Source: Trichoplax adhaerens (taxonomy: Eukaryota; Animalia; Placozoa). From it: a DNA stretch of 64,000 nucleotides. Within the stretch, counting starts at the first letter, position 1. Every line of letters starts with the position of its first letter. The position numbers and the translations under genes were made by a program. Below the pieces are notes generated by a model. It was not told where the DNA came from. It worked only from the letters and a program-made list of their open reading frames with translations, and ran no database searches. This document shows, piece by piece, positions 38,223 to 61,427 of the stretch. The stretch lies in contig NW_002060961.1 in assembly GCF_000150275.1 (NCBI RefSeq), positions 372,001 to 436,000 of the forward strand. The letters are read 5' to 3'.

Positions 38223-41200
38223 TGTTAATGTAGAGAAAACACTGGAGTCGTAAGCGACAACACATACATCTGCAAATGAGGGGGAAAAAAAAAAAACCAC
38301 TTACTAAAACAGCATGAAAAATGAACAAATCATCACATCCACACAATATCCAACAATAAACAACTATAGCAACATAACGAGTACAGTAGAAGGTAAAAGG
38401 TAGCTTCCAATAGCACCACAGCTAAATTGTAATTCCATTTTTACTTTTTATAACATTGTAAATGGATTGATTGCTTTTTTTACTATTATTGGACTTTTTT
38501 CTACATCTGTTTATCGCTGTCACGCATAGTGTGCATGTATCCATTTCCAGCTGTACAAGACACATGACTGTCATACACTGTACAATAAAGAGTTTCTATC
38601 TTCAGATAAACAGTCCAGGACGTCTAGTCTAATCACTGTACAATCCTACCATGATGCTACACTATACAGTCAATTTACTTTCTGATCCAGTCCAGCAGTG
38701 GTTACCGTACTGTAGCCTATACTGTGTTGTGTCAAGTGAAAATTGTAGTAGACAAGCTATAACAATTAGTGTATGAACTCAACATAGTATACAAGCTGTA
38801 GAGGTCTTGTGATGAACATGTTGAGTCACTACCCTGCAGTCAGCCAAATGATGGTATTGGTTATCAAGTCAACGGTCATGTTAGTGCTCAATCTGTCTAG
38901 TGACAGCGATACAGTATAGAGTTTTGTATGCAAAGGAGGAGAGCATCGTCAAACAACAAACACGAAATGAGAGAAAAAAGAATTTAATCGAGTATTGACG
39001 ATGACTGGATAGTCATGCAATGGCTAGTAAAATACAGCAGGCTTCCTATTGGTATCAACATGTCAACGAATCCTACAGGGAATCAAAATACACCAATTTC
39101 AATAGTAAAAAAAATTTCCACTTTTACCATGACGGTAGCGCACCAACAGCAAAGAAATAGGATAGTAAGCGATATCACGTCGCTCACAAGAATATTTTCT
39201 ACAATTAAAAAACAATTATCCAGGTAGCCGCGATCCAATGACTTTTCTTTGCAGATATTTCGTCGATGTTTACAACTTGTACAAAGCAAGTGATAGCGAT
39301 GTTTTATCAAATGAAAGAATTTTGTACACTTTCCTAGTCCTAATTCTTACTTTGCGAAAATCCTAAAATAATACAGTACTACAGTATAGGACTGTGTCCC
39401 TAAGTGACTCGACTTGGTGCTCTATTGACAAAGATAGTCGCTGACCGCAGTACAGTGAGTCTACAGTGTACAGTATGTCCACTACAGTATTTTCATTGTT
39501 GCTGCCAGGGTCGGGTACGGTACAGTACAGTACAATACAGTACACTGTACTGTAGATTGAATCCTAGTACTGTACGGTACAGTACAACTTCTTGGTTTTT
39601 GTGAACGGTCAGTCAGTGGTGCGTATCGAATTGTATCCCTTCCATTTTCTCTATAGTAAACGCTGTTAAAATTGAAATTTCTTGACCCATTTTGTTGATC
39701 AAGATTTGAACATTTGTGTGTCATGTCGATGGTTCAAGTCGATTTAGTTTTAGCACAGTAAAGAAGTTGAGGTCTTGATGGTTGTATTTAGCTAACTTGG
39801 TTTTAGTTTTATTGAACCTCAATGGTTATAAAGGAGGGTTCCTATTGCAAGAAATTTCCATTTTAACAGCTTTTACTATGGAGAAAATGGAAGGGATCTC
39901 ATTTTCATGCCCATCAGTTTAGAGAGTATACAGTACAGTAGACATTAGGGCTTTTTCTTCTTTCTTTTATCCCACTGCGCTGCGGTGTACTGTACTGTAC
40001 TGTAGACGGTAAAAGAAAATGCTAGTGTTGCAAATTACTCTACAGTACAGTACGTGTTGTACAATGTACTGTACAGAGCAGCCGACCCTCCGAATTATTA
40101 TCACTACGGCACTGCCCCCGCACACTATACTGTACAGTACTGTACAGTACGGTACAATAGAAATCAATCAAAGATTTTTCTTCTTTTATGTACTGTACTG
40201 TACAGTGTACAGTACACTATTTCTATTTCTTCATGTCTTTGGCTAACAATCAACATGAACTACCAGAACTATTCTTGTCAGTTGTCACTGTAGCAGTCTT
40301 TTGTACTGTGCACTGTACACTGTACAGTATCGTACTGTAATTGTAAAAAGAAATTGGAGAGGTTTTCTCTCGCCTACTGGATATTCTTTTCTTTTACCTT
40401 TGTAGGTAAAATGAAAGACAAAAAATGGCAAAGCTCATTCAGTGACGGACTACTTAGAAAAAGAGCGACAATAAGTAGCCTTTCAGTACAAAATAATGTA
40501 GAAGCTCATCCATTTTCCGATCGTCTGCTCTACCATACTGCATCAAAGCGAATCTACAGGCTGTCTTGGGATGTCCATTGGGGACAGTATAGCGTACCGT
40601 TGTAGAGATGCGATGCAGCTGAAACAACTAGTAAAATAATCGTCCAGCCTAATTGGACATACGTGAACTATCATTTCCCGACCGTACCCTGTCTTTCTTG
40701 ATTGTCCTTGGTTCTAGTTACAGTATCTTGCTACGGTATATTGTACTGTAAGTCGACAGTATAGGATACAGTACGTGAGTACTGTACAGTACTGTACTGT
40801 ACAGTCGATTATCGTTCAAATGAGCCATGTTACTGTTGGATACTTTCGGTAGGGAATATTCACATTTTGCGGGGGACTAAAAGGGCCACTTTACGTCCGT
40901 CTCCCTTAACACCGTAACTGAAAGTGTATCCAGTGAAAACTGTGATACCAGGCACGACAACTTGATGTACTGTACTGTTATTGTGCGTGGGTTGACGATT
41001 TTGGACGAATATTGACTTTCTTCTGTCTTTCAACAAGTCCAAGACGTCTTGAGTAAAGGTAAAAAAAGAAAACCTAGCTATGATTCGATGAAGATGTCAA
41101 GACTTGCTTGTCCAGTACAATGTACTGTACGTCCATTCGTGTTCCAGTGCATTACTATGGATTGCTAAATACTGTACAGTACACTGTAAGGGAAGTTGCG

Positions 41201-41460
41201 GTGAATCACTACACGACCTACAGTACAGTACAATACTGTAAGACCGTGTACTGTACACTGTACAGTACAGTACAGGATATCAATCATGGCGTCCTGTAAA
41301 TATTCTACAGTACTCGAAGAAGGCAAAAAGGAAGTGCAACGGACCGACTCCTGACAGACGTGAAAAGGTCTAGTCAAAAATACAAATCATACAGTACGGT
41401 AGAATTGGCAGAAATGACGTGCAGTTTTTTAGGACACTAAGTACAGTACTATACAGTATT
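37680..41460. repeat. TACAG/TACTG pentamer and TACAGTACTGTA palindrome clusters around the CBP 5' end
   Basis: Dense clusters at ~37680-38030, 39370-39590, 39930-40340, 40740-40810 and 41110-41460. Confidence 0.85.
39635..39897. mobile_element. MITE-like element, 263 bp, with 50-bp terminal inverted repeats
   Basis: 39635-39684 ATCCCTTCCATTTTCTCTATAGTAAACGCTGTTAAAATTGAAATTTCTTG matches the reverse complement of 39848-39897 at 47/50; no clear target-site duplication. Confidence 0.65.
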
Positions 41461-44251: not shown

Positions 44252-47200
44252 ATGAATCTTCTAATGCTTTTTAGTTATGTCATCGTCAATTGGATGCTTA
44301 CGGTTACAACAGCAAGAACGCAAGGTAAAATGATAACCAAATTGATTATTAATAATAATGTCTCATTTATCCGTCAATGATTATTTCAATCCTTATCCAT
44401 GGATAATTAAACAGAATTAAAAGTAATAATAATTAATATAATTATAGTTTTGTGTTATAACATCTTTAATAAGATCAAGTAACGTACTGTAATGAGGTAA
44501 TGCAAAATACAAAATTTTATCTTTTGATTTTGATATTTTTCATATTTTCCAATTTGCTCCAACGACGATTGGGTATATTCACAGATGTAATAATTACGCC
44601 GCCAAGATATGTAAATGTGTTTTATGAAGAACAATCACCATTAGCTATTAGTCCTAATATCGAGCTGACATCATCATCGTCTCAGTCAGCTAATACTTCT
44701 GATAATCAAGTACAAATATCGAATGCCACAATAACATTACAATCTACATTAAAGAATATAACTCAAAATGACTGTTATTGCAATTCCAATATTTATGGCA
44801 CATGCGGTGTTGACAGTGCAACCATTACCGATATCCTCGATAATTCAACTATAGAAGGAAGTATTCAAAAAGAATCTGGTTATTACTCATTTAATGGCAA
44901 GGGTAGACTAAAATATCAGCAAAGTTTACGCCTTTATAATCTACCTAATAACTTGATCGTCTCCATTTGCTTTCGAATTCAATCTAATACCCGTGCATGG
45001 TTAATAACTACTGTTGCATCAGATGACAACCTTCTCGTGTACGGATTATATCTGTACGCTGATCTCAATCGTATTCTATTTCGCTATCGATCATCACAAA
45101 ATAGCTATTATTCATTCACTTTTAATAATGTCTTACTTGCACATGACGACTGGCATAATCTGGTCTTAGATATTAGCTATCCAACAGTAACATTAAATGT
45201 ACACGGTGAGACAACCTATACGAAATCTTACACTCTAACCCAATATATGATTAATAAGGAGAGTATAATTTATAGTGGCTGTCAATCGGGTAGCAATTTT
45301 GATCAATGTCTTTATGGAGATATAGCCAAAGTCATGATGCGAACAGGCGTATTAGATCTAGCTAAAGTTTCTTTTCCATTGGATATTAATTCTAATAAAC
45401 GACCAGATGCTCAAGGTATTATCAACTTTGATGGCACTGCATCTAGCGCTATGCTAGTCGATCGCCAAGTAACTCCATATCGATTTACAAATTATATGAC
45501 CCTATCCCTTAAAATCAAACAGGAATTGGGTAATGATGGCGCAATCATCTCTCGCAATTCCGCTCCAGGTGATCAAATAGATTACACACTTTTATCTCTA
45601 GGAAGTCAGGATATCATTGAATTCTGGTACCGAAGTACGCAAGGTTTCAATTTTAATCAGAAATCAATACTAAAGTACAATTTAACTGAGAAAAACTATG
45701 CAATCGACGACGGAAAATGGCATAATTTGACGTTACATATTCAATATCCTAATTCAACATTATATATCGACACTATCGTTATTCAACAGCAAATGCAACT
45801 TCCAGTCTTAACTAATAGTCAAAACGAAAACTACAACTTACTTTTTGGACAGTATTCGAGTGAAGTAAGTAATTTCTATCCATTCAAAGGATCACTAAGT
45901 CAAATTATAATTCGTCCTGAATATATCACATTAAATCAGATATTATGCTTACAAGCCGGATGTCTTGGATGTAAATGTGCTGGTCAGTGCACATTCAAAT
46001 GCCAGCATCAATTTATTTGTAAAGCAAATATATATCGATATCGATCTTGTGGTATATTAAAACAAGGGCTGGATATTGGTCAAGCTATACAGCAAACAGC
46101 TGAAAATTTACAACAAGATGTAGATAATAGTATTATTTTCAATGGTACCGAGGCATATATCGTCTCAAATGCTAGCCAACCTTTGATTCTAGATAATCAA
46201 TTAACCATTAGCACATGGCTATGGCAACCGATGATTAATAATACAAATCATCGATATATTTTAACAAAGTCTACAAATGATCAAATAATTTTTGGCCTAA
46301 GCCTCGTAAGCAATGATACTGTAATTTTATCTTTTCGTCAGCAGAATGTATCATTCAGCCTTCAGCAAAGAATAGATAACGAACGTTGGCATCAACTAAC
46401 TATATCAATCTCTGAAGGCTCTGCAACATTATATATTGATCATGATCTTATAGGTAAAGTGCTATAGTATCTATATGAGTTAAAAAAATACTAATCGTGT
46501 GGATCTTATACCAATTAGAAGGATAGTGTATATTATCCCCTTCATCTTTATTAAGAATTATTAATAGGACAGAATTTATATAAGTACATATATTGAATGA
46601 TTACCCAGTATAAGCAAGTTGACAATGTCTCTATCATGTAGCTTGATCATTTTTCTTAGGTATCTTCATAATACAATAGTCTATCATCTATTAGTACCTC
46701 AAAATAATTCATTTTGACTTGGAATATTAGAAAATGATAGCTGGTAATTTGTTGATGTTGAATATTAATATTCGTTTTTTACCTTTCAATTCATCCAAAT
46801 TACAGATAGTCAGTCTATACTTGACAATATTACTGATGATGGTAATGGTGTACTCGTTGCTGGAGCTTTATGGAATAGTCCCAATGCAATGGTAGGGTAT
46901 TATACCGGACGTCTGAAAGCTTTAGCATTCGGCAATAAAGCGTCAACAGGTGTTGCAATCCAATGTTTAAAGACGTGCGGACAACAATTACTTGTAATTG
47001 ATCCACCAATAAATACGAACAACACAATTATGGCATCCTATGATCAACAAATGGCTAAACTAACTTTACAAGGAGATAATATACTGCAAAATTATGCAGA
47101 TATCATACGTAGAATCTATTATTCTAATAGTTACGAGTCACCAAATCCAATTTCCGCCATGACAGCAGAAATTTTACTGTATCCAGATGAATTAACGCAA

Positions 47201-50200
47201 TTCAATTTGACAAGTTCAACTACATTTACTATCAAACCAGTTAATAATCTAGCACCAATTATAGATTTATCTGGGCCTGATATTAATTCTTATGATTATA
47301 CCACAAATTTTATCGAAACACAACCACCAGTACCTGTTGCATCGTCAGTTGCACGCATATTTACAAGGAATCGATTATTTACAACGATGACCACTTTGAT
47401 AGTGCAACTTATTAACTTTCCAGACGGCAATCATGATCAATTGCTATTTCAATCACGTCCTAATATTTCTATTGCAGCAAGTGATTTAACGGTTGATATT
47501 AGTAACGATTTTCATAATATTAATATCAGTGGACCTTCTACTTTGATCGATTATCAAAATCATCTCCTCCAAATTTATTATAACAACACTAGAGATGAAC
47601 CAACATGTCGATCACGTCAAATTGATTTCTACGCTACGATTAACGATCAGCGCAGCTATATCACTTCTGCAAAGGTCTATGTTTACGGCTATAATGATAA
47701 TAAACCGGTCTTTAACCAAACAAATTACTTAGCCTCCATGGTAGAAAATTCACCACCAGGTATATTTGTTGTACAAGTCGGAGCAACAGATATTGATGCT
47801 TGTCGCGGCAATACTATCAGTTATGCAATTGTTCAAGGCAATGAAAAAGGCAAATTCACTATTGATGCTGTTACGGGTTTAGTGACAACAACCCAATCAT
47901 TTGACTATGAACAACAGTCATCCTATAATTTAAATATTTCAGCTATAAATTACGATGAGCAAAAGGTATTGCAAGGCTTTACTACTCTATCCATTTCGAT
48001 CTTAAATATAAACGATAACGGATTTGTGATCAGATTAAATGGGATTCAAGATCCAAGCAATTCTCCATTTAATATTACAGGTAAAGAATAGTTTTTCTCT
48101 ATTTGATTGATATGACTTTATGCTGACATTAATAAGATAATACTAAACTACTGTAAGCCATAATAGCATAAGATCAGGAGTCATATGCTGGTAGCCAGAG
48201 AAGCCTTCCTATGCCTATTTTGTTACATTTCATTTTGTATCTTAGTCTTTTGATGCTATCAAATAGATTTGTAGTTGAAATTCTTAGAATGTACTATCGC
48301 TATAATAAGTTTAGTGACGACAAAGTAACAACTAGAATATGCCATTTATGCATAGATTATTTATTTTACCATTTTCATAATGTTTACTCACGAGAGAAAA
48401 ATTAAAAGATTTCTACTATAATTTTTAAAATGCTCTCTTTCCAGGATATAATGCTTCTTTGGACTATCTTGTCATATTCAATGATTCTAAACCTGCACAA
48501 GGTGTAGCTGTTGTTGGATCACAATTGGAAATCACTGATGGAGATAGCATTAATCCGTATATTACTTCGATGGATATCATTCTAACTAACATTGATAATT
48601 TCGATAATGAATTTCTATTTCTCAATTTATCCTTACTGGAACAATTTGGAATTCAAATCCAGCTCATTAATAATCGGTTAGATCGCCAAAAGTCTATCTT
48701 ACTAAGAGGCAATGCAAGTCATGTAGCTTATCCTCAAATCTTAAGAACTGTAATGTAAGTTATCCTTATATTTTTATAATCGGCTTGTACTATAATTAAA
48801 GCAACACATGGTAATCTTTTCTAAAAAATATTACCTGACTACTACAAGCAGAACTCATAATATTTATTTGATCTATACAAGCATATTTCATATTGAGGAA
48901 TTTAGATTCCACCTTAAAGTCATCATAACAGATTATATTGACTATTTTTAACCGTTAATTTCTTGTCATAGAACTATTTATTTTATAGTTTAATTTCAGA
49001 TTGACACTAAATGTATTTATTAATATCGATCCAGGTATTATTCCAATGCCACACAACTCAGTGGAGATGACAGAACGATTGAGTTTTTCGCTAGCGATGG
49101 TCAATTTCAGTCTCCGATTTCGCAAACTTATATCAGAATCATCCATAATGATAAATTTCGCCCTCAGATGATTCTGACCCAAAATAATTTCGTATTTACT
49201 GAAAATTCCAAACCTCTTGCTATTGCTTCAACCTTACGTATAACCGATAGAGATTATCCTTATTATAACTTGACTTCTGCATCTGCGTTTCTTGTCAATC
49301 CAGCGGCATCTTGTCTGACCAATTCTATGCTACAACTTTCCTGTCGCAATTCTACGAATATCAAGAGGTATTATTTCATATTGAATTTCTCGAGCTTATT
49401 TGTAGACATTAATATACATTACAGAATACGGAAAAATCTAATTTAAATAATAATTAATTATTTGCTCTATGTCTGCTCTTCTATAGCTGCAACGAAAGCT
49501 GTGGTCAGTATCTACAAGTTGATTCCCAAATAGCTTCTGAACTAAGCTTAAATTATAGTTATGTTGATAATATGCTCTCTCTATCTGGTAATAAATCACC
49601 GTTAACCTATGAAGCTATTTTGAGAACATTAACTTATACTAGTATCGCTATTGAACCTAGCGGTATTGACCGCCAAGTGCAGATTATTGTTCGAGATGAA
49701 GCTTTTACTAGCCTTCCAATATCGATTAATATTAAGATACGCTTAATTAACGACAATTCTCCCGTAGTGCGGTTAAACGGATTTCAAAGTCAGTCTAGTG
49801 TGAATATATCGGGTAGGATTTAAATCGACTTATAAGATTGCATAGCATTAATTTAGCATTAATCACTTACTAATCAATGCTGTAATTTTCATGGACTATT
49901 CTACTTTAGGCTTTCGATCTGATCGAGATTACTTGACTTATTACCATGATGTCTATAATGGAACTGCCATTGTTAACCCTAGTATAATTGGCCTTATCGG
50001 TACCAATGCTACAATTTCTGATTTAGATAGCCAATATCAAGTACGAAATTATATTGTTAATACTACCATCAAATTAATGGAAATTGAAAATATCGGGAAA
50101 GAGCGTTTAATCACAAGTAACAGTATTCCAAGCGGTTTTACTTTGAGTTATCCGCCAAATACCAATTATAACCAATTTCATATTAGTGTCAATGGTAATG

Positions 50201-53200
50201 GTAGCCACAGCGAATATTTGCAAATTTTTCAACTTTTCCGGTAAGTTATTTCGTTACGAGAGAAGTAGAGTATATTAATGATTCTATAGCATACACGGGA
50301 TCATAGTTCCACATGAGTAGATTGATTAAAATGCGCATCGGTAGCTGTCGATCAATAATTTATAAATTTATTTGCTAAGTCGATACCACAAATATTGCAC
50401 CAAGTGGATATCTAACGTAAGCCTAGATAAAAGTAATATCATTTTATTATAACAGAGATTTTATTATCGCATTTACAAGAGTGTTATTTGATAATTTTAT
50501 AGTATTAATAGGCATTTATAAGTGATATTTACACTTGTGATTCAAATTGAAAATAACATAGCTTTCAAGTTTATGAGTTATTAAACTCTAAAGTATGCAA
50601 CGTACTTAAAATCTTGATTAGATTAATATTGTTTTCCTACTTAAGCGTAGAAGCGCCATTAATGTCTCTGCTGTTAATGCTTGTATATATAATAGGTATC
50701 AAGCAATAGCTGCTAATCCTCTTGCAGGGTTTCAACGAACTATTTCATTTACTGTTAATGATGGTCGGCAGGAATCCTTACCTTCATTTACGTATATCCG
50801 ACTAATTCATTACGATAAACTAAGGCCTACCATAACGTTGACTAAAGCTCGATGGACGTATACACAGAATGACCAACCTTTACCTATTGCAGAAGGTATT
50901 ATTATCGCTGATCTTGACCAGCCCGAATTTCTACTGGAGGAAGCTGTTGTTGAATTGGTTCATCCTCTATCACATTGTAGCCATCCTCTCGCTATTGAAT
51001 ATGGTTGCCGGAAGCAATTTGATAATCAAATTGGACGACATTGCGATGGCTTAAGCGTTAACGCTCAAATTGGATTATGCATTCTTAGTTGTGGTCAGTA
51101 TTTATCTATAAATTCAACTCACGTAAAAAATTTACCTTCGTCTTCATCTTCTATAAAAATTATCAACGAAACACCAACTCGACTACTTATCAAGGGAAAC
51201 GGAACATCTATAGAATATCAACAAATATTATCAACACTAACGTTTACCGACTATTCTAGTGAATTGAAAACATCAAGTAGAAAGATTCAGATCTCTCTTC
51301 GTGATACAGTTGCGTTTAATACACCGACTAGCATCACTGTTGATGTTGTTAATAATGATAATCATCGGCCCTATGTACGTTGTAATCGCCGTACATTTTC
51401 TTTACTGCCAACTGCATCACGAGCCCTTGCAGTTGGTCAACTTGGGCCTATGGCTATTATTAATCCATCTCAACAGTTAATATCAGAAATTACCATTACT
51501 TTAACCAATATAGCAGGCCTTGATCAAGAGGATATTTCTATTATAACGCCTGGCAATGTGAATGTAACCCATTCAAGGAGAATAGTTTATAACATCACAG
51601 GCCAAACTACAACGTATGATCAAATTATTAAAACTTTAACCTATACGAATGATCAAGCGAATTTGCAGGCTGGTTGTCGTATAATTACTGCAACTTTAGC
51701 GGATCAACTTGGGAACACTGGTATTCCTCTTGATATTTTTATATCGATAATTCCTTATCCAACTAGTTTATTAGCGATTGCGTTCAATCATAGTACTGAT
51801 TTAAACTATTTTCCGTTTAAATTCAATCGCATGTATTTCGTATTGCAGACCGGACTACGTATAGTTAATACGGTAGCCAATGCATCGATTGAATCGATCC
51901 CTATTGCAGGAATTACGATCAAATTAAGTGGGTCATCGCTTACTAATCATGATTACATTCGTCTTGATCAAGGCTTAATTAGGCGATTTGGTTTAACATT
52001 ATCCGAATCAAGTAAGTGTAATAAAATTCTGTAAAATTGCTCTAGTTCTTGGATTCAATTAAAGTAAAATATCTTAGATATGCTATTGCTAAGTTAAGTG
52101 ATTCTATTGAGTACACAATTGCGGTGTACCATAGATTCGATAAGATCAGTTATAGGAATGAGATCTATAAATTTGATATAAGCTATCATTAACAACTAAA
52201 ATAGCTGCCTTACGATTTTATTATTCGCATTTTAATTTTTGAATATCGCACCGGAATCAGTTCTATAAATTTTATATAGGTTATCATTCAGAATTAAATT
52301 TCCGTCCTATGATTTTATTATTCGCATTCCAATTCTTGACTAGTGTACCGAAATCAGATCAGTATTATTAATGTTCACTTTCGATTTACAGGTGATACCT
52401 ATCACATAAATATTACTGGTATTGCAATAGCTAGGGACTATCAACTTGTCTTGCAATCACTTTATTATGTCAATAATGCTACTATCAATGTCCCACCGGA
52501 ATATCGTTATATCAATATGGCATTGCAGAATATTAACGGTAGCATCCAGGAAGCACAAGTGATCAATATCTTTGTCCATCCGATTCATTTCTATTTAACT
52601 TGCCCTGAATCAATAACCTTCATTATTCAAGTCACACCGCTACCATTTTATCCACTTCGACTCGTTCGCTTTCGTTCCGAATTAGGCGACCATGATATCT
52701 TAACGAATGCAACAGTCGAATTACAGGCTTATCCTAATACTGGCGGTAGATTAATTTATAACGGAAATGATTCCACTGGATTGGAGATTATGCAAGAGGG
52801 TTCATTTACCTACTACCGAGTAAGTTATAATTAGTTTCTCTATCCTAATTTAAGTAAAAGTAAAATAGAGTAGTGTATTATATAGATCTTGAAGTTTTCA
52901 ATTCGTTGGCGAGTAATGGATAATTTTATCGATTTCATAAAGTCTCTAATTATTTCATATAATATTTTCTTCAAGAATATTCTATCGCAGGTGATGTATA
53001 GCAATAATTGGCCTTTATCTTCTTTAACTGAGCAAAATTTAACCTTTACTTTATCAAAAAAATTCCAAACACATTCATGCACTATACCTATGAAAATTAC
53101 CCGACCTTACTCCCCCTACGTTGATTTAAATGGTCCTTCAAAAATTGGAAACCATTTTGCAATGACGACTAATTATCCTAATGCTAGCACATTATCAATT

Positions 53201-56200
53201 AAAATAGCCGCATCAGATGCAATTATTGATGATCAACCACAGCTCGATATCAATCAATTTGAAATTAAAATACAAATTACCAAGCCGCTGACCAACGGAA
53301 GGCTAGGAATAACCTTATGTTCAGGAAATATCACAGATGGTTGTCAAATTGGGTAAATTATAGAAATTGCTGTGATTCTTATTGCAATACATTCGCTCCA
53401 AGTCTAATAGTCTACAAATTGGTAGAGAATTCTTTTTTATACCTATTTAATTTTATGTTTTCCTTTCCTTGCTATTTCATAGCCACGTTGGTTATACTGT
53501 AGCAATCTTCTATAAATGGTGTTAATTATTCCTTTAAGATATTAATTTCCGTCAAGATACGTAGTTCTATCAGTCATTTTGGTATTCATCAATTAAAATG
53601 GATACTAAAAGTGCTGTATTAAATATCAATTCCGCCACGATAAATGACATTATTTCCAAGATTGTCTATTAGTTTTTTATTCCGTTAAAGTACCGAAGAG
53701 GATTATATCATAAATTTCATCCATCGTTTTTTATGATAATATAAAGTTGCTTTACATATCGATCTAATTACAATTAGTTACGTTACCTTGAAGATTATGG
53801 TTTTCATTTTTAGTACTGCTTAATAGCATATCAAGATTTTTTAACATTAATGGTGCGACCATTGAGAGCTTAACTGATCTTAAGTTAGAACTCCATTGTG
53901 AAAATAATCTATTTCTCTTTTTTTAGAGAATTTACCAATAATAGTCTATGGTGCCAATGTGGCACTACTTTTGAGGGTGCCTCCATTACAGTGGATTCAA
54001 GTTCTGATGGAAGGGTCTTATATTTACGTCAAAACGTATCAAAGCCCTTCAACAATGATACTTTTGCTTTACTTCTTCGTGATTATGTCGTTTTCATGAC
54101 CGGTCTAATGGCGCCTGCAAGTAACTTCACTACAGCGCAAATAACTTTCTCGATTGTCTATAACGGGAACACCAGTATACCAAGTACTGCAAGCATTACT
54201 TTCTTGACTGCTTCCTTAAATCCAACAGTTTGCCTAGATTCAATACAGGTACAGCTATCTTTTAAATACATTGCTAGCCTAAAAGCTGATATAATTGCAT
54301 CTGTAGTTGTAGTTTTCCATTGCAATAAAGCGTTAGTGGACGATCAATTGCCGTAGCTGCAGAGTATTTTAGAATACGGTATTATTCTGGAAGTGATTTT
54401 CATATGGCTGGAGCCTGGATGTATTATCTTTTCTTTTTATGATTTAAAATTTGTTCTTGGATGAGAAGCCAATCAGTGCATAATTTTTTTGATCGAAAAA
54501 TATTATTGTAACTGCTGCAAGGATTTCGATCTTACATACTTATATCCAACTTTAAACACTACAAAAGGAGGTTAACTTCCATAGTGTGTCTTCTTGTAGT
54601 CTCGAATTTTTCTTAGGCTGATAAATTAACATTGAAGTCTTTTACTTTCTGGATATTAGAATTGTAATTACAAGGTAGAAATTGGCGAGAAAACAACGTG
54701 TGTTAACGTTATTCCTCCTACAATTCAACTCCATTATAACTACTTGATATCCAATATCACGGCTTCATTGCAATACGTCGATCCTGATCAAATATTAGCG
54801 ATAAATAACACGGATGGATTTGTCATTCAACAAGTTAGTTTATAAGCCTTAAGGAGTATCAAAAAACTTCGTATTAGAAATATTATTTTCTACTGTTAAT
54901 TCTATAACGTGCTTTATCCAATTTTAATTCGCTTAAGACAGTTAAGTATTTGAGTAAAAACTGAGTTTCGTTTCGTAATCTCATTTCCGTAAAATTATTA
55001 TTTTTCTTCCAGCCTAGCAACAATACCTTAATCATCACTAGTAATGATGTGGCAACATCACCTGATCGCTTTCTGCTTCCACTACGAAATTTGCAATATT
55101 GTTATTTAAAGATAGGAAATATTATTGCCAATCAAGCCGATGTATCTAATAAGTAAGTTTAAGATAGGCCTCGAACCCAAATGAAATATTGGTTACTGTG
55201 ATTTCGTATGGTTTATCGTAATAGCGTCCTATCTTAGATTATTACGAGTTTATCATATACTACTAAAAGAGAATCTAGGATTTCCCTTAGTAATATGCAC
55301 TTATGTCTCTATAGATGTATAATTAATGGCTAGAATATTCTTTTACTTAATTTTGTGCAGTGCTTATGTTACATCCCTCAATTACATATGGAATTTCTCT
55401 AGTTTTTTTGCTTCCTGTGCGAAAAATTAGTCAAAATTTTAATATAGCTCTCGCAACAGTTCTTCATTTCATAAGGCTTACTTACATTGAAGCACGAAAG
55501 TAGAATAAATAGATTAGCGCCGTATCTTAGATTATTATCATGTACTACTAGAAGAAAATATAGGATTCCTCTAAGTAATCTGTAGTTATGCTTCTATGGA
55601 TGTATAATTGAGAATAGCTACTAGCTATTCTGCTATTCAATGTTATTCAATACTTATGTTATATTCCTCAATTGCACGAGGAATTTCTTCAGTTTATTGC
55701 TTTCTATGTAGAAATTGAGAAAAATAGTCAAAATTTTAGTATAGTTTTTGCAACGGTTCTCCATTTTATAACGGTTACATTAATGGATGGAAGTAGAATA
55801 AATAGAAAACATGAGCTAGGATATATATATATATATATATGTATATATAATATACTCGTATCACAGTAATTACGAGTAGAAGATTGTTTAGGCACGCAGA
55901 AATTATTTCTCATCTTCCATAGCTTAATATATGAAATGGTAAAGAAGCTTGATCCCCTAAATTAATGTTATGGATATCATTACCTTGATGGGCATTAACT
56001 AATTATTTTTTGGATCATAATGTTGCGGTAATTATAGCATTTAATACGATTTTATTTACTTGTAATTGCTACTAGATTTGTAGATATTACTGCGACGGGT
56101 AGCAATGGCATAACAAGTAACACTGTACAAAGTGAAATTACAGTTAAGTTATCATGCATTAGCCAGAATATTATCCAAATCGAAAATTATCAACAGCTGA

Positions 56201-58113
56201 AGAATGCCGGCCGCTGCCAAGAAGTACAAGAGTTAGATATTAATTGTCTAGGAAATCAGCAAAGCTGTGATATAGATTCTCTCAAGCCGTTAGAGAATAT
56301 TACCGTAAGTAGAGACTTATACTATCTCTATTTTATTATTTGTTTAATAAGGAGTGACAAAACGTGCTGAGGTATTCCAAGCCTGCTTCATTATAATAAT
56401 CTGCTGTTTATTGTACCGTATTACTCTATTTTATGCTGATTTGCAAATAGAAACTATTTTTTATAATTTAATGGCAGTTAAATTTCATGGCTTCACTAGG
56501 TTATTCGGGAAGTTTTACGTATTCGCGGTTTGCCAATCGTCGATTTAGCTGGCTTAGAAAATATATTGCAACTTGGTGGCATTGAAATTAATGACAATTC
56601 ACAATTAATTAGTCTTGTTGCTTTAGCAGCTAATGCGCCAAATAATACCTCCGTTTTCGTTAACGACATTGCTAGTAGAGCTATTATTCGCTATAATAAT
56701 CAATTAATCGATATTTCTATCCTACGTCGAGCTAAGGCTGTTTCAGGTATTGAAATTAATAACATTGTACCTATTATGATTAATATTTTCGTTATTAAGT
56801 ATGAAATACGTCACATATTGATTTTTGACCTTTTCTAGTGGATTTACAATAGAAAATTGTCTAGTATGAGTAGATAGATCTAAATGATAGCTAGAATTTG
56901 TAAATGTTGTAATGATATTTCGCAGGGAATCTACACCTGGAAGGAAACGAAAATCTATATAATATATCTGCTTTATCCGGAATTCAGGAAGTCGGAGGAA
57001 ATTTATACATTGGCAATTTATTCATTTCTAATTTAGACATTTTTCAGAATTTAAAATCAATTCGAGGGTCCTTGTATCTCTTTCAAAATCAAGTAGGTTA
57101 TTAATAAGTAACAGGATCAGACAAATATAATTTATCGTCATACTTTAATAGACGATAACTAGTTACAGTTTAGTGAGAAGTATCCAGTTAGCTTGAATTT
57201 TCAGTAACGGTATAATTTAGATTTTACTGACAACGTAGCTGTAGGCCATGATAAATTAAAATGTAGCTGATCTAATTGTATATGCTATAGCTGGAGTATT
57301 ATTTAATTTAAATTTATTCTTATGTAAGCATTATCAACCTTATTACACTAAACTGCAAGTCTTGATGTTACAAATACATCTGCAGAGTAGATAAATCTTA
57401 AAAGGAATCTAACTATAGAGTCAATTGAACTGTAAAATATCGACAAACTTAAAGCATGTTAAATTCAGCTAAGACAGCGTGGTATTATTCATGAAGTAAT
57501 AGCTTATGTTAAGGCTGTTTTGATAGGATATTATAGCTCTAAATATTTATCGGACATAACTAATTAGCATGTTTGAGGTTGTGTTTAATCGTCATGCTTT
57601 TTACCTGCCATTCTTTTGATTTTTGTCAGAATTTAGTCAACGTCAATGGCTTGAGAAATGTACGAAGTATAGGAGGCATCGTATTTGTTATGCTAAATAA
57701 TTTATTACAGAATCTAGATGGAATAGCCAATTTAACAACTATAGGTCAAAGGGTTTATATTCAGCTTAACAATAATCTGTGCTTTGTTGGGAAAGAATTA
57801 GTTGACGATCTTAATTTTTGGCAGGTAATATTAATTTCTTATAAAGAAAAACAATATTTAATTCTAACTTTCGTTAACTTAATTTTTTTCATCTTTCTCT
57901 CAATCTCATTCTTATGAACGTGTAATATTTTATGATGTGCTTAATACGGATCAGACAATACAACCCGCCGATGCTGCAAAATTAAATTTCGTTGCATATA
58001 ATGGAGATTGCCCTAGTTACAGGAATTGCACGAATTACGGGAATCCATGCGCTGTCTCTATCAGCTCGCTATGCCAAAACGCAAATCAAAGTTATTCCTG
58101 TAACAATAACTAA
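44252..58113 (+). CDS. Giant secreted calsyntenin-like protein (~2,750 aa, ~18 exons): signal peptide, 3 LamG/TSPN domains, tandem cadherin-like repeats, one canonical cadherin repeat, receptor L-domain LRRs, Cys-rich end
   Basis: Exon 1 44252-44324 MNLLMLFSYVIVNWMLTVTTARTQ; LamG motifs HDDWHNL, DDGKWHNL, DNERWHQL; cadherin NDNKPVF..ENSP..ATDID..FDYEQ..NINDN; L-domain repeats such as VNGLRNVRSIGGIVFVMLNNLLQNLDGIANLTTIG; stop at 58111-58113, AATAAA at ~58196. Internal exon edges are approximate. Confidence 0.85.
55230..55805. repeat. Intronic tandem duplication (~293-bp unit, 2 copies), followed by an (AT)n run at ~55821-55850
   Basis: TCTTAGATTATT...GATGTATAATT...CTTATGTTA...TAGTCAAAATTTTA...GTAGAATAAATAGA starting at ~55232 and ~55525. 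Confidence 0.8.
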
Positions 58114-58748
58114 CAGATTATTACATTGCATTTATAAAGTTGATGGTGATGCTTCATAATATTTCAAGCTGCTGACCTTATATTTCTTTGTTTTAAATAA
58201 ATCAATATTAGGCAAAAAGACTTAAAAAAGTAACCGTAAATATTTTAAGCTTACAGTACCAGAAACCTAACATTAGCTGATTGAAGTTACTGTAAAAGCT
58301 ATTGATAAGAGATAATGTAACATAATAACAAGTAAATGGAAAATATTTATATAAGAGTAATTTCATATTAATTAGCTAAAATTGTTTTTAAGTAACCTAC
58401 TTCATACTTCAGTGATTTTAATTCAAAGAGTAAAATGATTTCAGAAAATTCTTTCTTATTGTATAATGTACTAATCATGAACGAATATGGCATTACAATA
58501 TCATGTTCATGTAAATGATTGTAATAAGTTATGTTTATTAATAATTTTCATCATTATCTAAGTCATGTTACAGTTGCAAGTTTTGCAAAATATTGAGATA
58601 ATATACGCATACACGTACGTATATCAATAATTTAGGCTATTAAAATTGACTAATAATTAATACACATTAAAACTATTTTTTGGCTAAGCATTTCAATATT
58701 TAATTATTTAGATTTATACAATATTGACCGGCATATTTATAGCAAATA

Positions 58749-60880
58749 TTATTCATTATCTCCTCGATCTTCATTTGTAGTCTCGATAGGGGGGATATCT
58801 GCGTGTCCGCTAATGCGCGATGCTAGGCTACGCTTCTTTCTCGGCTGATATTAATACAAATAATAAATAAAATTAACACTCAATAAAAGCTCTTGAAGGT
58901 AATCCGGCTATAGAAGACTGACCTTCTTTGGCTTCTTTACACTATTATGGATTAATTCGATATGTCTCTTTAATGATGACTAATAAACAGATCATTAATG
59001 ATTAGTATGATACTACAGGCATAGTGGTATTTGTAGGTCACGATATTGCAAAATTCTTACGATATTATTATTTACTATATAATACCAAGGATAATTAGAG
59101 ACTTGCCTTGTAAGGAAATTGTTCTTCACATATTGTACATGAAAATAGTCGATGCTGTTGGTGATGGGATCGAATATGAGAAATCATATTATTTCGCTAG
59201 GTGGTTATCAAACACATGCAGTATATTAGTCAGGGATGGTGGTAGATTTCAATTTACGACATGACACAGTAATCGTAAGGACAATAATTTACCCGAGTAA
59301 ACTGACGATTACATATCGGACAAGGGAATAATATTCTTTCTGCATGATGTATTTTAAGATGTTCTTTCAACTGTTAATTAGATTATACACAAGATTATAT
59401 ATTATATCTGTGGTGAGACGGAATCGATATGTTGCATCACAGTGGATATCTACAAATACTGTTAAAAACTTCCTTACCAGTCTATTACTGGAAAGCAATT
59501 TGCCACACTCTTTGCATTTAAGTTCTAGTGATGAATAATTAAGGTAAAATATGTCAACATTTACTTTATTATTGCCATCGCCTTTACTATTTGTAAGGTG
59601 TACAGCACATAACACTCTGCATATACACGTACATCTTTAATTGTTTACGTTTTTGCTACTCACCTTTAGACTTATGGGTGCTAGCTATGTGTTTCCTTAG
59701 TAATAAATATGTCTCACATACTACAGAGCAGTCTTGGTATGTGCAAGGGTATCCTGGTAATGTCATGAAAATTAGTTATTCAGCAAAGATTTTATTCGTG
59801 TGTTTAGACCAAATGAGAAATTTAAGTTGCCATCGACTTTAAAAAAATATATATACATATATACGTGTATATATAAGCAGTATGAGAAAGTATCTGTCTA
59901 GATTACCTTGATGAACTTTTTCATGTCTAATTAATTTGCTTTTGGTTGAAAAAGTTTTGTTACAGTCTTTATGTTTACATGTGAAGCCGTTATGACGATT
60001 AAGCTGCTCGAGGTTTTCTTCGGTTTGAAATGACTATAATTTGATTGATTATATAATTACGTTATTGCTTACAAAAGTACAGTAGAGTATAGTACATAGG
60101 ATAGATTATTAAGTGATTGTAGCAACTTTGGTATACGCATACGTATGCAAGAAAGATTAAAAGTGAAAGACTGAGAGTATTACCTTGCAGTTACTTTTCT
60201 GATGACGTATAAGATTTGATCGGTACATAAAAACTTTACCACAGGAGCATACTGATGCTGGTCGTAACGTTTGATGTAGAATTGCATGGCGCTGTAAGTG
60301 ATATTGCCTAGTAAATGTCTTACCGCAGCCTTTAAATGTGCAGGAATATGGTCTCTGAATAGTAACAACATAAGAAAATTTACAGTTAATATTAATTCTA
60401 AGCAAATTACCATTTGTTGTTCTAAAATTCTGCATTAACCTATCGTCAAGTATTCTAGGTCAATACACTTTCCTAATGGAACCCATACAAGAATATACAT
60501 AGATAGAGATATTGAATATACACCTTCTTTACGCCACTCATGCACTTACTGTATAGTGAATTAGATATAATCAAAATGGCATCGATACGTTTGTTACAGA
60601 ATTTATAAGTTAGTTTTACTATAGTCAACTCTTCCCCATGTAGATTACAGTCTACACGTAGGTTATGAATGAATACGTTAAGATGATAATCGCAAGCAAC
60701 ATTTCAATATTGATATCTAACATTAACAAGCAGCATAGATAATTTACAGCCACAAATAAGAACTAGAATCATTACAACGGTTGATAGACTGACCTCGCCA
60801 CTATGGATAATTGAATGTTGAGTAAGATGAGCTAATTTTTGAAATGATTTTTGGCATCCATCATAGCTGCATGTATACAT
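58749..60880 (-). CDS. GTF3A: Transcription factor IIIA (5S rRNA gene/RNA-binding C2H2 zinc-finger protein), 9 exons
   Basis: Fingers YTCSYDGC..HSIIH, YSCTFKGC..HAILH, FTCKHKDC..KLIRHEKVHQG-YPCTYQDC, LKCKEC, FPCPIC..SHIRSHH, FSCTIC; diagnostic C-terminal PRKKRSLASRISG (vertebrate KRSLASRLTG, recalled). Start codon at 60880 is inferred. Confidence 0.88.
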
Positions 60881-61427
60881 GTTGATAAAAAAATAAATAA
60901 TAATGCTCGAATGGACTCCAGCTCGCTTGCTACCATCTTAATGAAGCGTTGTCATGGTCAAATCATCTGGAATAGGATGCTTCATGCAAGTTAACCAATA
61001 CTGTCGCTCTTGCTGTAAGATTTTTCCTATATCTAAAAATTTTTCGATCAATGCCGCAGCTCGGAGCATTAATTATCGGCTGATCTTGCAAAGCAGCTCC
61101 ACGAAGTGTCGGTAGGTTGTACTATAACCGTACTGTAGAGTACTGTAGTTACTATGGATTCCATGCCAGCGGATCTATTTCGTAGGGTGGTCAATAATTG
61201 AGGAGCCATAGACGACATTATTTTTGCTAATAATTTATAGTTGGTGCTGTAGTTTATCCTATACTATACTCAGTCAGTATATCATAGTAGTATACGGCAT
61301 CTCGCTACTGAAAATTGTGCGTAAAAATAATGTCACTACAGGTGTAAAACCGGTGTCCCTCCCCGAGGCGGATCAAATCAACGTCATCCTTATTGCGCAT
61401 GACTGCAGAAATGATCGTACGTTACTC

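What the first reader, a model, noticed from the sequence alone, without database searches (positions are those of the whole stretch)
44252..58113. Giant secreted calsyntenin-like mosaic protein ending in a receptor L-domain
Seen: the N-terminus LAISPNIEL...QISNATITL...C...GTCG...TDIL precedes the LamG block, and IQCLKTCGQQLLV...LTLQG...IRRIYYSNSYESPNP follows it. Recalled knowledge: calsyntenins have the same flanks around their single LamG (PNIHL..VQATVEL..C..LCG..ELL and IDCLYTCKEGL..LTLEG..ISYLNS..PTP). Here there are three LamG domains instead of one, no N-terminal cadherin pair, roughly ten further cadherin-like repeats, one internal canonical Ca-binding cadherin repeat, and EGFR/insulin-receptor-type L-domain LRRs at the end, with no transmembrane segment found. 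Inference: an architecture I do not recognise, possibly a secreted adhesion or matrix fibril with a ligand-binding tip, relevant to the origin of a synaptic adhesion family.
Basis: partly seen in the sequence, partly recalled or inferred. Interest (0 to 1): 0.85.

Follow-up and report, generated by a model that had tools for sequence, protein, structure and literature searches.

The report
Giant secreted calsyntenin-related mosaic protein
This is one real, expressed placozoan gene for a secreted protein of about 2,750 residues that reuses the core of the calsyntenin ectodomain (laminin-G domains nested in a beta-sandwich repeat), lengthens it into a rod of about eleven such repeats and ends in an EGFR-type L domain; the architecture is unusual but is assembled from known parts.

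Summary
On the + strand, 44500-58113, 17 GT..AG exons give one open frame of about 2,767 aa (2,752 with the other exon 7 acceptor). It has a signal peptide and no membrane span. Spliced transcript contigs from four runs confirm the E7/E8 junction and all nine later introns; one 10.2-kb contig spans them. Pfam confirms three LamG domains, one canonical cadherin repeat and a Recep_L_domain.

The "cadherin-like repeats" are not Pfam cadherins. They are a ~140-aa beta-sandwich unit (AF2 pLDDT 90) with no solved close relative, abundant in giant bacterial surface proteins.

The calsyntenin link is real but indirect:
- Pfam CLSTN_C does not hit this gene.
- It does hit the homologous bacterial units, at profile positions that reproduce the order LamG, second half-unit, whole unit.
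- In this genome the unit profile finds only this gene and one on contig C1409. That gene has the calsyntenin layout with a transmembrane tail and scores 0.94-0.97 against calsyntenin clusters.

So the organism (probably Trichoplax) has an ordinary calsyntenin, and this gene is a giant secreted relative or side branch. The LamG triple sits in the same surface loop that carries Cys-rich inserts in repeats 4 and 6. Function is inferred: a secreted adhesion or matrix linker. Novelty: new variant of a known kind.

The parts
44500..46453 (+). Exon 1 (651 codons + 1 nt): signal peptide (44500-44565), first half of repeat unit R1 (about 44605-44772), short Cys loop, LamG1 (44830-45390), LamG2 (45391-45960), Cys-rich linker (about 45958-46074), start of LamG3 (46075-46453)
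   Evidence: Open frame and ATG. LamG E-values per slice. N-flank against the unit HMM: iE 2.7e-5; 16.3 bits, reached by 0 of 1000 shuffles. The donor at 46454 is predicted, not seen in reads. Orthologous ORF of 649 aa, 56% identical.
46806..48080 (+). Exon 2: end of LamG3, C..CGQ motif and second half of R1 (46952-47149), whole unit R2 (47213-47638), canonical cadherin repeat (47726-48004), start of R3
   Evidence: Unit HMM: 4e-10 for the R1 second half and 1.7e-33 for R2. Cadherin 77.5 bits. phmmer of 46799-47668 finds 667 proteins. Ortholog P0002 is 66% identical. Splice sites predicted.
47243..47719 (+). R2 as a folded domain: nine-strand beta-sandwich with one short helix. The loop at model residues 70-80 is the insertion site used elsewhere in the protein.
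   Evidence: AF2 with a 23-row alignment: mean pLDDT 90.3, pTM 0.85. Only generic Ig-like matches in PDB.
48445..48754 (+). Exon 3: body of unit R3
   Evidence: Unit HMM 1e-11. Splice sites predicted. The ortholog contig L008 has the matching exon.
49035..49367 (+). Exon 4: end of R3, first half of R4, start of a Cys loop
   Evidence: Unit HMM 5.2e-10. The acceptor at 49035 fits the unit consensus without a gap.
49487..49788 (+). Exon 5: C..SCGQ motif, second half of R4, start of R5
   Evidence: Unit HMM 3.9e-15.
49910..50240 (+). Exon 6: body of R5
   Evidence: Unit HMM 1e-7.
50651..52011 (+). Exon 7 (the acceptor may instead be 50696, 15 codons shorter): end of R5, R6 with a 45-aa Cys-rich loop insert (50793-51308), R7 (51333-51707), start of the degenerate R8
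   Evidence: Unit HMM 9.1e-16 and 7.2e-10. Alignment A1 shows the insert at the same column. The donor at 52012 is confirmed: the loose end in four runs equals 51982-52011.
52392..52819 (+). Exon 8: end of R8, weak R9
   Evidence: Spliced contigs in X5-X8. Unit HMM 2.8e-6.
52976..53352 (+). Exon 9: weak end of R9, first half of R10
   Evidence: Joint 52819/52976 in four runs. Unit HMM 5.5e-5.
53927..54248 (+). Exon 10: degenerate repeat region
   Evidence: Joints 53352/53927 and 54248/54660. Only weak unit matches.
54660..54833 (+). Exon 11: degenerate repeat (R11, first half)
   Evidence: Joints. Weak unit match, iE 0.021.
55013..55152 (+). Exon 12: degenerate repeat (R11, second half)
   Evidence: Joints 54833/55013 and 55152/56076.
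56076..56304 (+). Exon 13: Cys-containing linker and start of the leucine-rich beta-helix region
   Evidence: Joints. No Pfam family above cut-off.
56500..56746 (+). Exon 14: leucine-rich turns, with no family hit of their own
   Evidence: Joints. Pfam gives only LRR_EndoS at E 0.087. PDB gives nothing.
56926..57092 (+). Exon 15: receptor L domain, first part
   Evidence: Recep_L_domain 1.3e-7, 32.1 bits against a cut-off of 21.8. Best PDB matches are EGFR L1 and ErbB2 L2. Joints seen in X5, X6 and X8.
57630..57824 (+). Exon 16: receptor L domain, second part
   Evidence: Recep_L_domain 1.5e-3, 19.1 bits, below the cut-off. ErbB3 at E 0.18. Joint 57092/57630 in X5 and X6.
57955..58113 (+). Exon 17, coding part: 52-aa tail with five Cys, stop at 58111-58113. 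The exon runs on as 3' UTR.
   Evidence: Joint 57824/57955 in four runs; contigs continue past 58249. Phase tracking gives the stop.

Best explanation
One 17-exon gene of a placozoan (probably Trichoplax adhaerens) encodes a secreted glycoprotein of about 2,750 residues built on the calsyntenin ectodomain core.

After the signal peptide comes a ~140-aa beta-sandwich repeat unit whose surface loop carries three LamG domains in tandem. Calsyntenin appears to carry a single LamG in the same place. A second whole unit follows, again as in calsyntenin. The protein then continues, where calsyntenin has its membrane anchor, with one Ca-binding-type cadherin repeat and about nine more units. Two of those units carry Cys-rich inserts in the same loop, and the last four are degenerate. 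The protein ends in a leucine-rich beta-helix that includes an EGFR/insulin-receptor-type L domain, followed by a small Cys-rich tail.

Inferred mechanism: the repeats form an extended spacer, possibly stiffened by Ca2+ at the retained D.D and NDN.P motifs. This spacer holds two binding modules apart, the LamG cluster at one end and the L domain at the other. The protein would thus bridge or organise partners in the extracellular matrix or between cell surfaces.

Shown: the gene structure of the 3' half, transcription, domain identities, the nesting, and the absence of a membrane span. Inferred: secretion, rod shape, Ca2+ binding, both binding functions, and descent from a common ancestor with calsyntenin.
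For: Gene and transcript:
- Exon-by-exon phase tracking is open from the ATG at 44500 to the stop at 58111.
- The E7/E8 junction and nine later introns appear as GT..AG joints in contigs of four runs from three studies. One 10,247-nt contig has 6,202 nt upstream of exon 8. The E7 donor is confirmed.
- Runs on record as RNA hold 62-63% of the sampled words of 44500-52100.

Domains.

The unit:
- phmmer finds 667 proteins, with up to 19 repeats each and a period of about 140 aa.
- The unit HMM maps R1 to R11.
- The AF2 model of R2 has pLDDT 90.3.

Nesting:
- The N-flank matches the first half of the unit (16.3 bits, reached by 0 of 1000 shuffles).
- The C-flank matches the second half (4e-10).
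- The R6 insert lies at the same alignment column, in the low-confidence loop of the model.

Calsyntenin link:
- The bacterial units hit Pfam CLSTN_C: whole proteins at 2e-35 to 2.6e-10, and 16 of 23 single units.
- Mapping puts CLSTN_C positions 9-56 on the second half-unit and about 100-240 on one whole unit.
- The genome-wide profile search finds only this gene and the C1409 gene.
- The C1409 ORF has LamG, a C..CKEG motif, a half unit, a whole unit and a TM segment. It scores CLSTN_C E 0.0028 and 0.94-0.97 against calsyntenin clusters in the Atlas.
- hhalign of the unit profile against the C1409 profile gives E 6.7e-5, probability 64%.

Secretion: hydropathy and the C-terminus.
Against: - Pfam CLSTN_C gives no hit at E 0.1 on any exon or on the window in the six-frame search of the genome. 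R2 alone has no Pfam hit at all.
- No real calsyntenin sequence could be obtained, and none is in PDB by sequence. The link therefore rests on a chain through bacterial repeats, one Pfam profile and one divergent paralogue.
- Direct comparison of this gene with the C1409 gene is weak: BLASTP E 0.032 and hhalign of thin profiles at probability 3.6%.
- Six introns of the 5' half are predicted only, and the exon 7 acceptor is ambiguous.
- The four last repeats and exon 14 have only weak matches.
- Nothing here tests secretion, shape or binding.
Confidence: 0.68

Rival explanations
1. This is an independent mosaic and not calsyntenin kin. The ~140-aa unit is a widespread building block, in bacteria above all, and LamG domains are common. 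Domain shuffling could have produced LamG next to these units twice, so the resemblance of the flanks would reflect the shared unit type only.
For: There is no direct CLSTN_C hit. The closest detectable relatives of the units are bacterial. Direct similarity to the C1409 gene is weak. The number of LamG domains, the lack of N-terminal cadherins and the lack of a TM segment all differ from calsyntenin.
Against: The same uncommon arrangement is seen here, in the C1409 gene and in the layout of the CLSTN_C profile: LamG inside the unit loop, a C...C.G motif right after it, the second half-unit, then one whole unit. In 105 Mb, only these two genes carry the unit.
Confidence: 0.2
2. The protein is held at the cell surface after all, through an unseen alternative 3' exon with a membrane span or lipid anchor, or by tight binding to a membrane partner. 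It would then work as a very long adhesion receptor rather than a matrix component.
For: Its relatives are membrane-bound or wall-bound: calsyntenin, and bacterial surface proteins with MYXO-CTERM sorting signals. The transcript contig runs 1,471 nt beyond 58249, and that part was not examined.
Against: All contigs that cross exon 17 read through the stop at 58111 with no joint before it. The C-terminus is hydrophilic and there is no convincing membrane span.
Confidence: 0.08
3. The repeat region entered the placozoan lineage by transfer from bacteria and was later fused to animal LamG, cadherin and L domains.
For: After the placozoan orthologue, the best hits of a search without a word index are all giant bacterial proteins at 25-34% identity.
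Against: The library is dominated by prokaryotic and metagenomic proteins. The units are interrupted by introns at varied positions and have host-like base composition. Animal calsyntenins carry the same unit according to Pfam, so the unit was probably already present in early animals.
Confidence: 0.04

Closest known systems
Calsyntenins (CLSTN1-3, CASY-1, Cals; Pfam CLSTN_C PF19699)
   Same: Inferred through the CLSTN_C profile layout and the C1409 gene: a LamG/LNS domain sits inside a loop of a ~140-aa beta-sandwich unit. A C...C.G motif and the second half-unit follow directly after the LamG, and then one whole unit. At least one cadherin repeat is present in the same protein.
   Different: [quoted passage not shown] This protein has no N-terminal cadherins, three LamG domains, about nine extra units, one internal cadherin repeat and a C-terminal L domain. 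It has no membrane span and no cytoplasmic tail, and it gives no direct CLSTN_C hit.
The calsyntenin-like gene of the same genome (G000:C1409, about 2477548-2480900, minus strand)
   Same: It is the only other gene in the genome found by the unit profile. It has LamG, a C..C.EG motif, a half unit and a whole unit in the same order. A placozoan orthologue exists in the same samples.
   Different: It is short (the last exon has 473 codons). It has a single LamG, a transmembrane segment and a 37-aa tail. It scores 0.94-0.97 against calsyntenin clusters, against 0.76 for the window gene.
Giant bacterial surface proteins with tandem ~140-aa units (planctomycetes, cyanobacteria, myxobacteria, Anaerolineales; mostly annotated as hypothetical, 'beta strand repeat-containing' or 'tandem-95 repeat protein')
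   Same: The same repeat unit at 22-30% identity over the whole unit, with the conserved motifs P.vDLnG, tDvD, L.L.G, Y..vL, Y.N and P....R. They too are long tandem arrays on extracellular proteins.
   Different: In the sequences examined they have no introns, no nested LamG, no Cys-loop inserts and no L domain. They carry bacterial sorting signals such as MYXO-CTERM.
CSPG4/NG2 and FRAS1/FREM proteins (LamG domains followed by cadherin-like CSPG repeats)
   Same: The overall logic is the same: N-terminal LamG domains, then a long run of cadherin-like beta-sandwich repeats, in a matrix or cell-surface protein.
   Different: No exon hits Pfam Cadherin_3, the CSPG repeat. In those proteins the LamG domains are not nested in a repeat. 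CSPG4 is membrane-anchored.
EGFR and insulin receptor family L domains (Pfam Recep_L_domain)
   Same: Exon 15 passes the Pfam cut-off. Its best solved matches are EGFR L1 and ErbB2 L2.
   Different: No furin-like Cys-rich domain, fibronectin domains or kinase were found. The L domain here is the C-terminal end of a secreted protein, and exons 13-14 extend the leucine-rich region without any family hit.

Membership tests
Calsyntenin | Match to Pfam CLSTN_C (PF19699) above its cut-off of 27 bits | tested here: not met
   No hit at E 0.1 on any exon. There is no hit on the window in the six-frame search of the whole genome, and R2 alone has no hit. The link is only transitive: homologous bacterial units hit the profile.
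Calsyntenin | Two N-terminal cadherin domains (PMC9064300) | tested here: not met
   The signal peptide is followed directly by the first half-unit and LamG1. The only cadherin repeat lies after R2.
Calsyntenin | A single LNS/LamG domain (PMC9064300) | tested here: not met
   Three LamG domains, each detected on its own.
Calsyntenin | Transmembrane region and short cytoplasmic tail that binds kinesin (PMC9064300) | tested here: not met
   No membrane span, and a hydrophilic Cys-rich C-terminus. The stop codon is read in transcripts.
Calsyntenin | LamG flanked by the two halves of one unit and followed by a whole unit (layout derived here from the CLSTN_C profile) | tested here: inconclusive
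   Met in this gene. For calsyntenin itself the layout is inferred only from profile positions and from the C1409 gene, whose pre-LamG half-unit match is weak (iE 0.31). No real calsyntenin sequence or structure was available.
Cadherin superfamily (Pfam Cadherin PF00028) | At least one extracellular cadherin repeat above the cut-off, with Ca-binding motifs | tested here: met
   77.5 bits against a cut-off of 28.8. It aligns to CELSR1, protocadherin and CDH23 repeats. The motifs NDNKP, E.S, TDID, DYE and NINDN are read.
LamG / concanavalin-A-like (Pfam Laminin_G_2, Laminin_G_3) | Profile match above the cut-off | tested here: met
   Whole exon 1: 61.3 and 50.6 bits. Taken singly, LamG2 (26.9 against 22.9) and LamG3 (28.6 against 27.6) pass, and LamG1 (23.0 against 27.6, E 9.7e-5) falls just under.
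Receptor L domain (Pfam PF01030) | Profile match above 21.8 bits | tested here: met
   Exon 15 scores 32.1 bits; exon 16 scores 19.1 bits, under the cut-off. EGFR and ErbB2 are the best solved matches. The joined domain was not scanned, because it spans an intron.
CSPG4 / FRAS1 / FREM | CSPG repeats (Pfam Cadherin_3 PF16184) | tested here: not met
   No Cadherin_3 hit on any exon at E 0.1.
Unnamed ~140-aa tandem unit of bacterial giant surface proteins | Significant full-length match to the unit, in tandem, with the conserved motifs | tested here: met
   R2 1.7e-33, R6 9.1e-16, R4 3.9e-15, R3 1e-11, R7 7.2e-10. phmmer E-values reach 1e-89 against bacterial proteins. The alignments are A1 and A2.

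The most novel reading that the evidence does not exclude
The giant secreted form could be close to the ancestral state. On this reading, calsyntenins are shortened, membrane-anchored derivatives of a long adhesin made of tandem ~140-aa units with LamG domains nested in a loop. That adhesin type would be shared with, or exchanged with, bacteria before animals diversified. Placozoans would then keep both the long and the short form side by side, and the uncharacterised region of calsyntenin between the LNS domain and the membrane would be a remnant of that rod.
Probability: 0.12. Interest if true: 0.75.

Novelty: new variant of a known kind. Interest (0 to 1): 0.55.

Why it matters
Calsyntenins are conserved synaptic and transport adaptor proteins whose ectodomain beyond the cadherin and LNS domains is poorly described. 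This locus suggests three things.

1. The region around and after the LNS domain is made of a defined beta-sandwich unit, with the LNS domain nested in one of its loops.
2. The same unit builds giant bacterial surface proteins.
3. An animal without neurons or synapses has both an ordinary calsyntenin-like membrane protein and a giant secreted relative.

That gives a concrete handle for asking what the calsyntenin ectodomain did before synapses existed. It also adds a candidate matrix or adhesion protein to placozoans, whose extracellular matrix is little understood. The parts themselves are all known kinds, and large mosaic matrix proteins are common in early-branching animals, so the surprise is moderate.

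Tried and rejected
Attempts to bring real calsyntenin sequences into the session all failed:
- The word-index search with exon 1 found only the placozoan orthologue P0001.
- The same search with the C1409 ORF, and with its two-row profile at E up to 10, found only P0154.
- PDB by sequence has no calsyntenin, and no relative of the unit, for exon 1, exon 2 or bacterial P0003. The unit profile matched only designed armadillo repeats through summed weak matches, which I take as spurious.

Other results that led nowhere or were rejected:
- A two-unit AF2 model (R6-R7, 13 rows) was poor (pLDDT 59) and was not used for fold search.
- Fold searches with the good R2 model gave only generic Ig-like sandwiches: Foldseek best E 1e-3 with TM at most 0.51, and VIA Z at most 8.8, which is within the background range the tool states. 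So I do not claim a specifically cadherin fold, nor a new one.
- A close paralogue search in the genome found only the gene itself.
- Pfam found nothing on the upstream exons of the C1409 gene, on the Cys-rich linker between LamG2 and LamG3, or on exons 13, 14 and 17.
- NCBIfam has no model for the unit.
- Literature searches for calsyntenin together with Trichoplax, placozoa or Nematostella found no paper. PMC4263861 is not held.
- Earlier findings of this scan: nothing near the locus, and nothing under the word calsyntenin.
- Bacterial contamination is rejected, because the locus has introns and spliced transcripts. A split into two genes in the 3' half is rejected, because single contigs cross all joints.

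Full report
Source and setting. The window is G000:C1396:372001-436000. The genome has 105.6 Mb in 1,414 contigs and about 33% G+C, and its genes have short GT..AG introns. From my own knowledge, this size and contig number fit the Trichoplax adhaerens assembly.

Gene model. Stop-to-stop open stretches on the + strand between 44.4 and 58.1 kb were linked into 17 exons.

- 3' half, from reads. Contigs from four runs of three studies, two runs on record as RNA-seq, were laid on 52250-58249. They show nine GT..AG joints: 52819/52976, 53352/53927, 54248/54660, 54833/55013, 55152/56076, 56304/56500, 56746/56926, 57092/57630 and 57824/57955.
- One contig of 10,247 nt (X5) and one of 2,727 nt (X6) cross all of these joints.
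- The sequence lying before 52392 in all four runs equals window 51982-52011, which fixes the exon 7 donor at 52012.
- 5' half, predicted. The other six introns were chosen from splice-site strength and frame. They are not seen in reads, because only one read-laying run of 6 kb was allowed.
- Indirect support for the 5' half:
  - Phases tracked exon by exon stay open from the ATG at 44500 through the read-confirmed exons to the stop at 58111-58113.
  - The X5 contig has 6,202 nt upstream of exon 8, against 5,866 nt of predicted coding exons. That leaves about 336 nt for a 5' UTR.
  - Runs on record as RNA hold 62-63% of the sampled words of 44500-52100.
  - A genomic contig from another sample (L008) has orthologous exons 1, 2 and 3 in the same order, 56-66% identical at the protein level.
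- Exon 7 acceptor. It may be 50651 (better splice score) or 50696. The latter removes 15 residues and restores the Y-to-Y/F spacing of nine that R2, R3 and R6 show in the unit helix (my reading). The product is therefore 2,767 or 2,752 aa.

All searches were exon by exon, by reference. Features that cross introns (the complete R1 module, the complete L domain) were therefore not scanned or folded as wholes.

Domains. Exon 1 starts with a signal-peptide-like stretch, the hydropathy maximum of the exon.

- LamG. Pfam finds three LamG domains, 1.6e-16 for the exon. Cut apart they give 9.7e-5, 7.2e-6 and 1.8e-6. A Cys-rich linker without family hit lies between LamG2 and LamG3.
- Cadherin. Exon 2 holds one canonical cadherin repeat (77.5 bits). 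It aligns with CELSR1, protocadherin and cadherin-23 repeats.
- L domain. Exon 15 passes the Recep_L_domain cut-off (32.1 bits), and exon 16 falls just under it (19.1 bits). The best solved sequence matches of exon 15 are EGFR L1 and ErbB2 L2, E 0.016-0.05. Exons 13-14 continue the leucine-rich pattern without any family hit.
- Whole protein. There is no convincing membrane span and the C-terminus is hydrophilic. The exons together carry 66 N-glycosylation sequons and 50 Cys.

What the repeats are. A search without word index (phmmer against 1.84 billion representatives) was run with the 290 residues between LamG3 and the cadherin repeat. It found 667 proteins.

- The best hit is the placozoan orthologue (66% identical).
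- All the others examined are bacterial surface proteins of 1-7 thousand residues: cyanobacteria, planctomycetes, Anaerolineales, and a MYXO-CTERM protein. They match the query up to 19 times with a period of about 140 aa.
- A unit HMM built from them maps the window protein as follows:
  - R1, split between exon 1 and exon 2;
  - R2 (1.7e-33);
  - the cadherin repeat, which itself matches the unit weakly (9e-4);
  - R3 to R7 (1e-7 to 3.9e-15);
  - four degenerate units, R8 to R11.
- AF2 on R2 with a 23-row alignment of single units gives a confident model (pLDDT 90.3, pTM 0.85): a nine-strand sandwich with one short helix.
- PDB searches give only generic Ig-like sandwiches. "Cadherin-like" is thus justified by the shared linker motif (NDN.P), the D.D motif and the weak profile match, not by a specific structural match.
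- No Pfam or NCBIfam model is dedicated to the unit.

Nesting. The orthologue scores 6.5 bits, reached by 25 of 1000 shuffles. The C-flank matches the second half (4e-10). The break lies at unit positions about 72-84. R4 and R6 carry Cys-rich inserts ending in C..SCGQ at that same place, and the R2 model has its only low-confidence loop there. The LamG triple is therefore an insertion in a surface loop of R1, bracketed by Cys motifs.

Calsyntenin link. CLSTN_C gives no hit on any exon, none on the window in the six-frame genome search, and none on R2 alone. Four indirect lines do support the link.

1. The bacterial relatives hit CLSTN_C strongly, 2e-35 to 2.6e-10 per protein. It is the only family that single units match consistently (16 of 23 members of A2).
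2. Mapping the matched stretches onto unit coordinates places CLSTN_C positions 9-56 on the second half-unit and about 100-240 on one whole unit. That is the order found here after LamG3.
3. A profile search of the whole genome with the unit finds only this locus and one gene on contig C1409.
4. The C1409 gene looks like a true calsyntenin:
   - Its last exon encodes LamG, C..CKEG, a half unit, a whole unit, a transmembrane segment and a 37-aa tail.
   - It gets CLSTN_C at E 0.0028, below the cut-off.
   - In the Atlas it scores 0.97, 0.96 and 0.94 against calsyntenin clusters, with about 200 of 256 shared features. The window piece scores only 0.76, a lead at most.
   - hhalign of the unit profile against the C1409 pair gives E 6.7e-5, probability 64%.

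Direct comparison of the two placozoan genes is weak. I conclude that the organism has an ordinary calsyntenin candidate, and that the window gene shares its core module. Common descent is probable but not proven. No real calsyntenin sequence or structure could be obtained.

How it probably works (inference). A signal peptide, no anchor, many glycosylation sites and paired Cys motifs point to a secreted glycoprotein.

- Eleven sandwich units plus one cadherin repeat would make an extended spacer. D.D and NDN.P motifs are retained at the cadherin repeat and several units (R3, R4, R6) and lost in others, so any Ca2+ stiffening would be partial.
- LamG domains in neurexins, laminins and agrin bind proteins or glycans, often with Ca2+ (established knowledge). 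L domains form ligand-binding faces in EGFR and insulin receptor family members (established knowledge).
- The most economical reading is a two-ended linker in the matrix or between cell surfaces. Nothing here tests it.

Comparison and novelty. This is not a calsyntenin by the published definition of two N-terminal cadherins, one LNS domain, a TM region and a cytoplasmic tail (PMC9064300). Four of five features tested are not met. It resembles CSPG4 and FREM proteins in logic but lacks CSPG repeats. Among the 150 best relatives none shares the LamG block, and the L-domain exons gave only two marginal matches (E 0.0015-0.0036). No paper links calsyntenin with placozoans. I rate it a new variant of a known kind, of moderate interest. 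The more general point is that CLSTN_C is built from a unit shared with bacterial giant adhesins, with the LNS domain nested in it. That may be the more useful result, but it needs a check against real calsyntenins.

Noticed in passing
G000:C1409:2477548-2480900, minus strand (L001; L003:5552-8898): Probable calsyntenin orthologue of this genome. The last exon encodes LamG, C..CKEG, a half unit, a whole unit, a TM segment and a 37-aa tail without an obvious acidic or WD kinesin-binding motif. Three or four upstream exons look cadherin-like by eye but have no Pfam hit. Atlas scores are 0.94-0.97 against calsyntenin clusters, and CLSTN_C is below its cut-off (17 bits).
   Followed up: partly
L002, L008, L009 (Logan contigs of SRR30664516 and SRR30664517): Genomic contigs from another sample carry orthologues of both genes, 49-66% identical in protein with the same exon order. 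This presumably reflects a different placozoan lineage. The organism was not identified.
   Followed up: partly
L005, L006, L007 (bacterial loci) against Pfam CLSTN_C: Single bacterial units hit the animal family model CLSTN_C (16 of 23 members of A2) although the placozoan units do not. The bacterial units seem closer to the profile than the placozoan ones are. No dedicated Pfam or NCBIfam model exists for this very widespread unit.
   Followed up: partly
window 50651 / 50696: There are two in-frame acceptors for exon 7, 45 nt apart. The one with the weaker splice score gives the better fit to the repeat consensus. They could also be alternative acceptors.
   Followed up: no
window 52157-52360: Tandem repeat of 97 bp, 2.1 copies, 77% matches, inside intron 7.
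   Followed up: no
window 55275-55462, 57162-57357, 57392-57652: Short low-depth contigs lie inside introns 12 and 15, one of them laid on the minus strand. In X5, loose ends at 52947 and 54876 carry sequence not found on the + strand of the window. These may be retained introns, DNA carry-over, antisense transcripts or chimeric contigs.
   Followed up: no
window 58114 to about 59720: The 10.2-kb transcript contig runs 1,471 nt beyond 58249. This means either a long 3' UTR or a merge with the 3' end of the convergent zinc-finger gene at about 60.1-60.9 kb on the minus strand.
   Followed up: no
window 35423-36857 (minus strand) and 60160-60937 (minus strand): Neighbouring genes as read by eye from translations. 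Upstream there is an exon with a Cys/His pattern like a TAZ zinc finger of CBP/p300, plus a low-complexity Ser/Asn-rich exon. Downstream there are C2H2 zinc-finger exons. Neither was checked with Pfam.
   Followed up: no
window about 38000-41400 and L003:1650-3100: Open stretches rich in the peptide pattern TVQY / CTV / LYS occur in the intergenic region upstream of the gene and also near the C1409 gene. This suggests a dispersed simple or interspersed repeat of this genome.
   Followed up: no
literature, PMC12125631: In C. elegans, calsyntenin CASY-1 transports the insulin receptor isoform DAF-2c, a protein with L domains. This is a curiosity, given that the placozoan relative carries an L domain in cis. 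It is not evidence of anything here.
   Followed up: no
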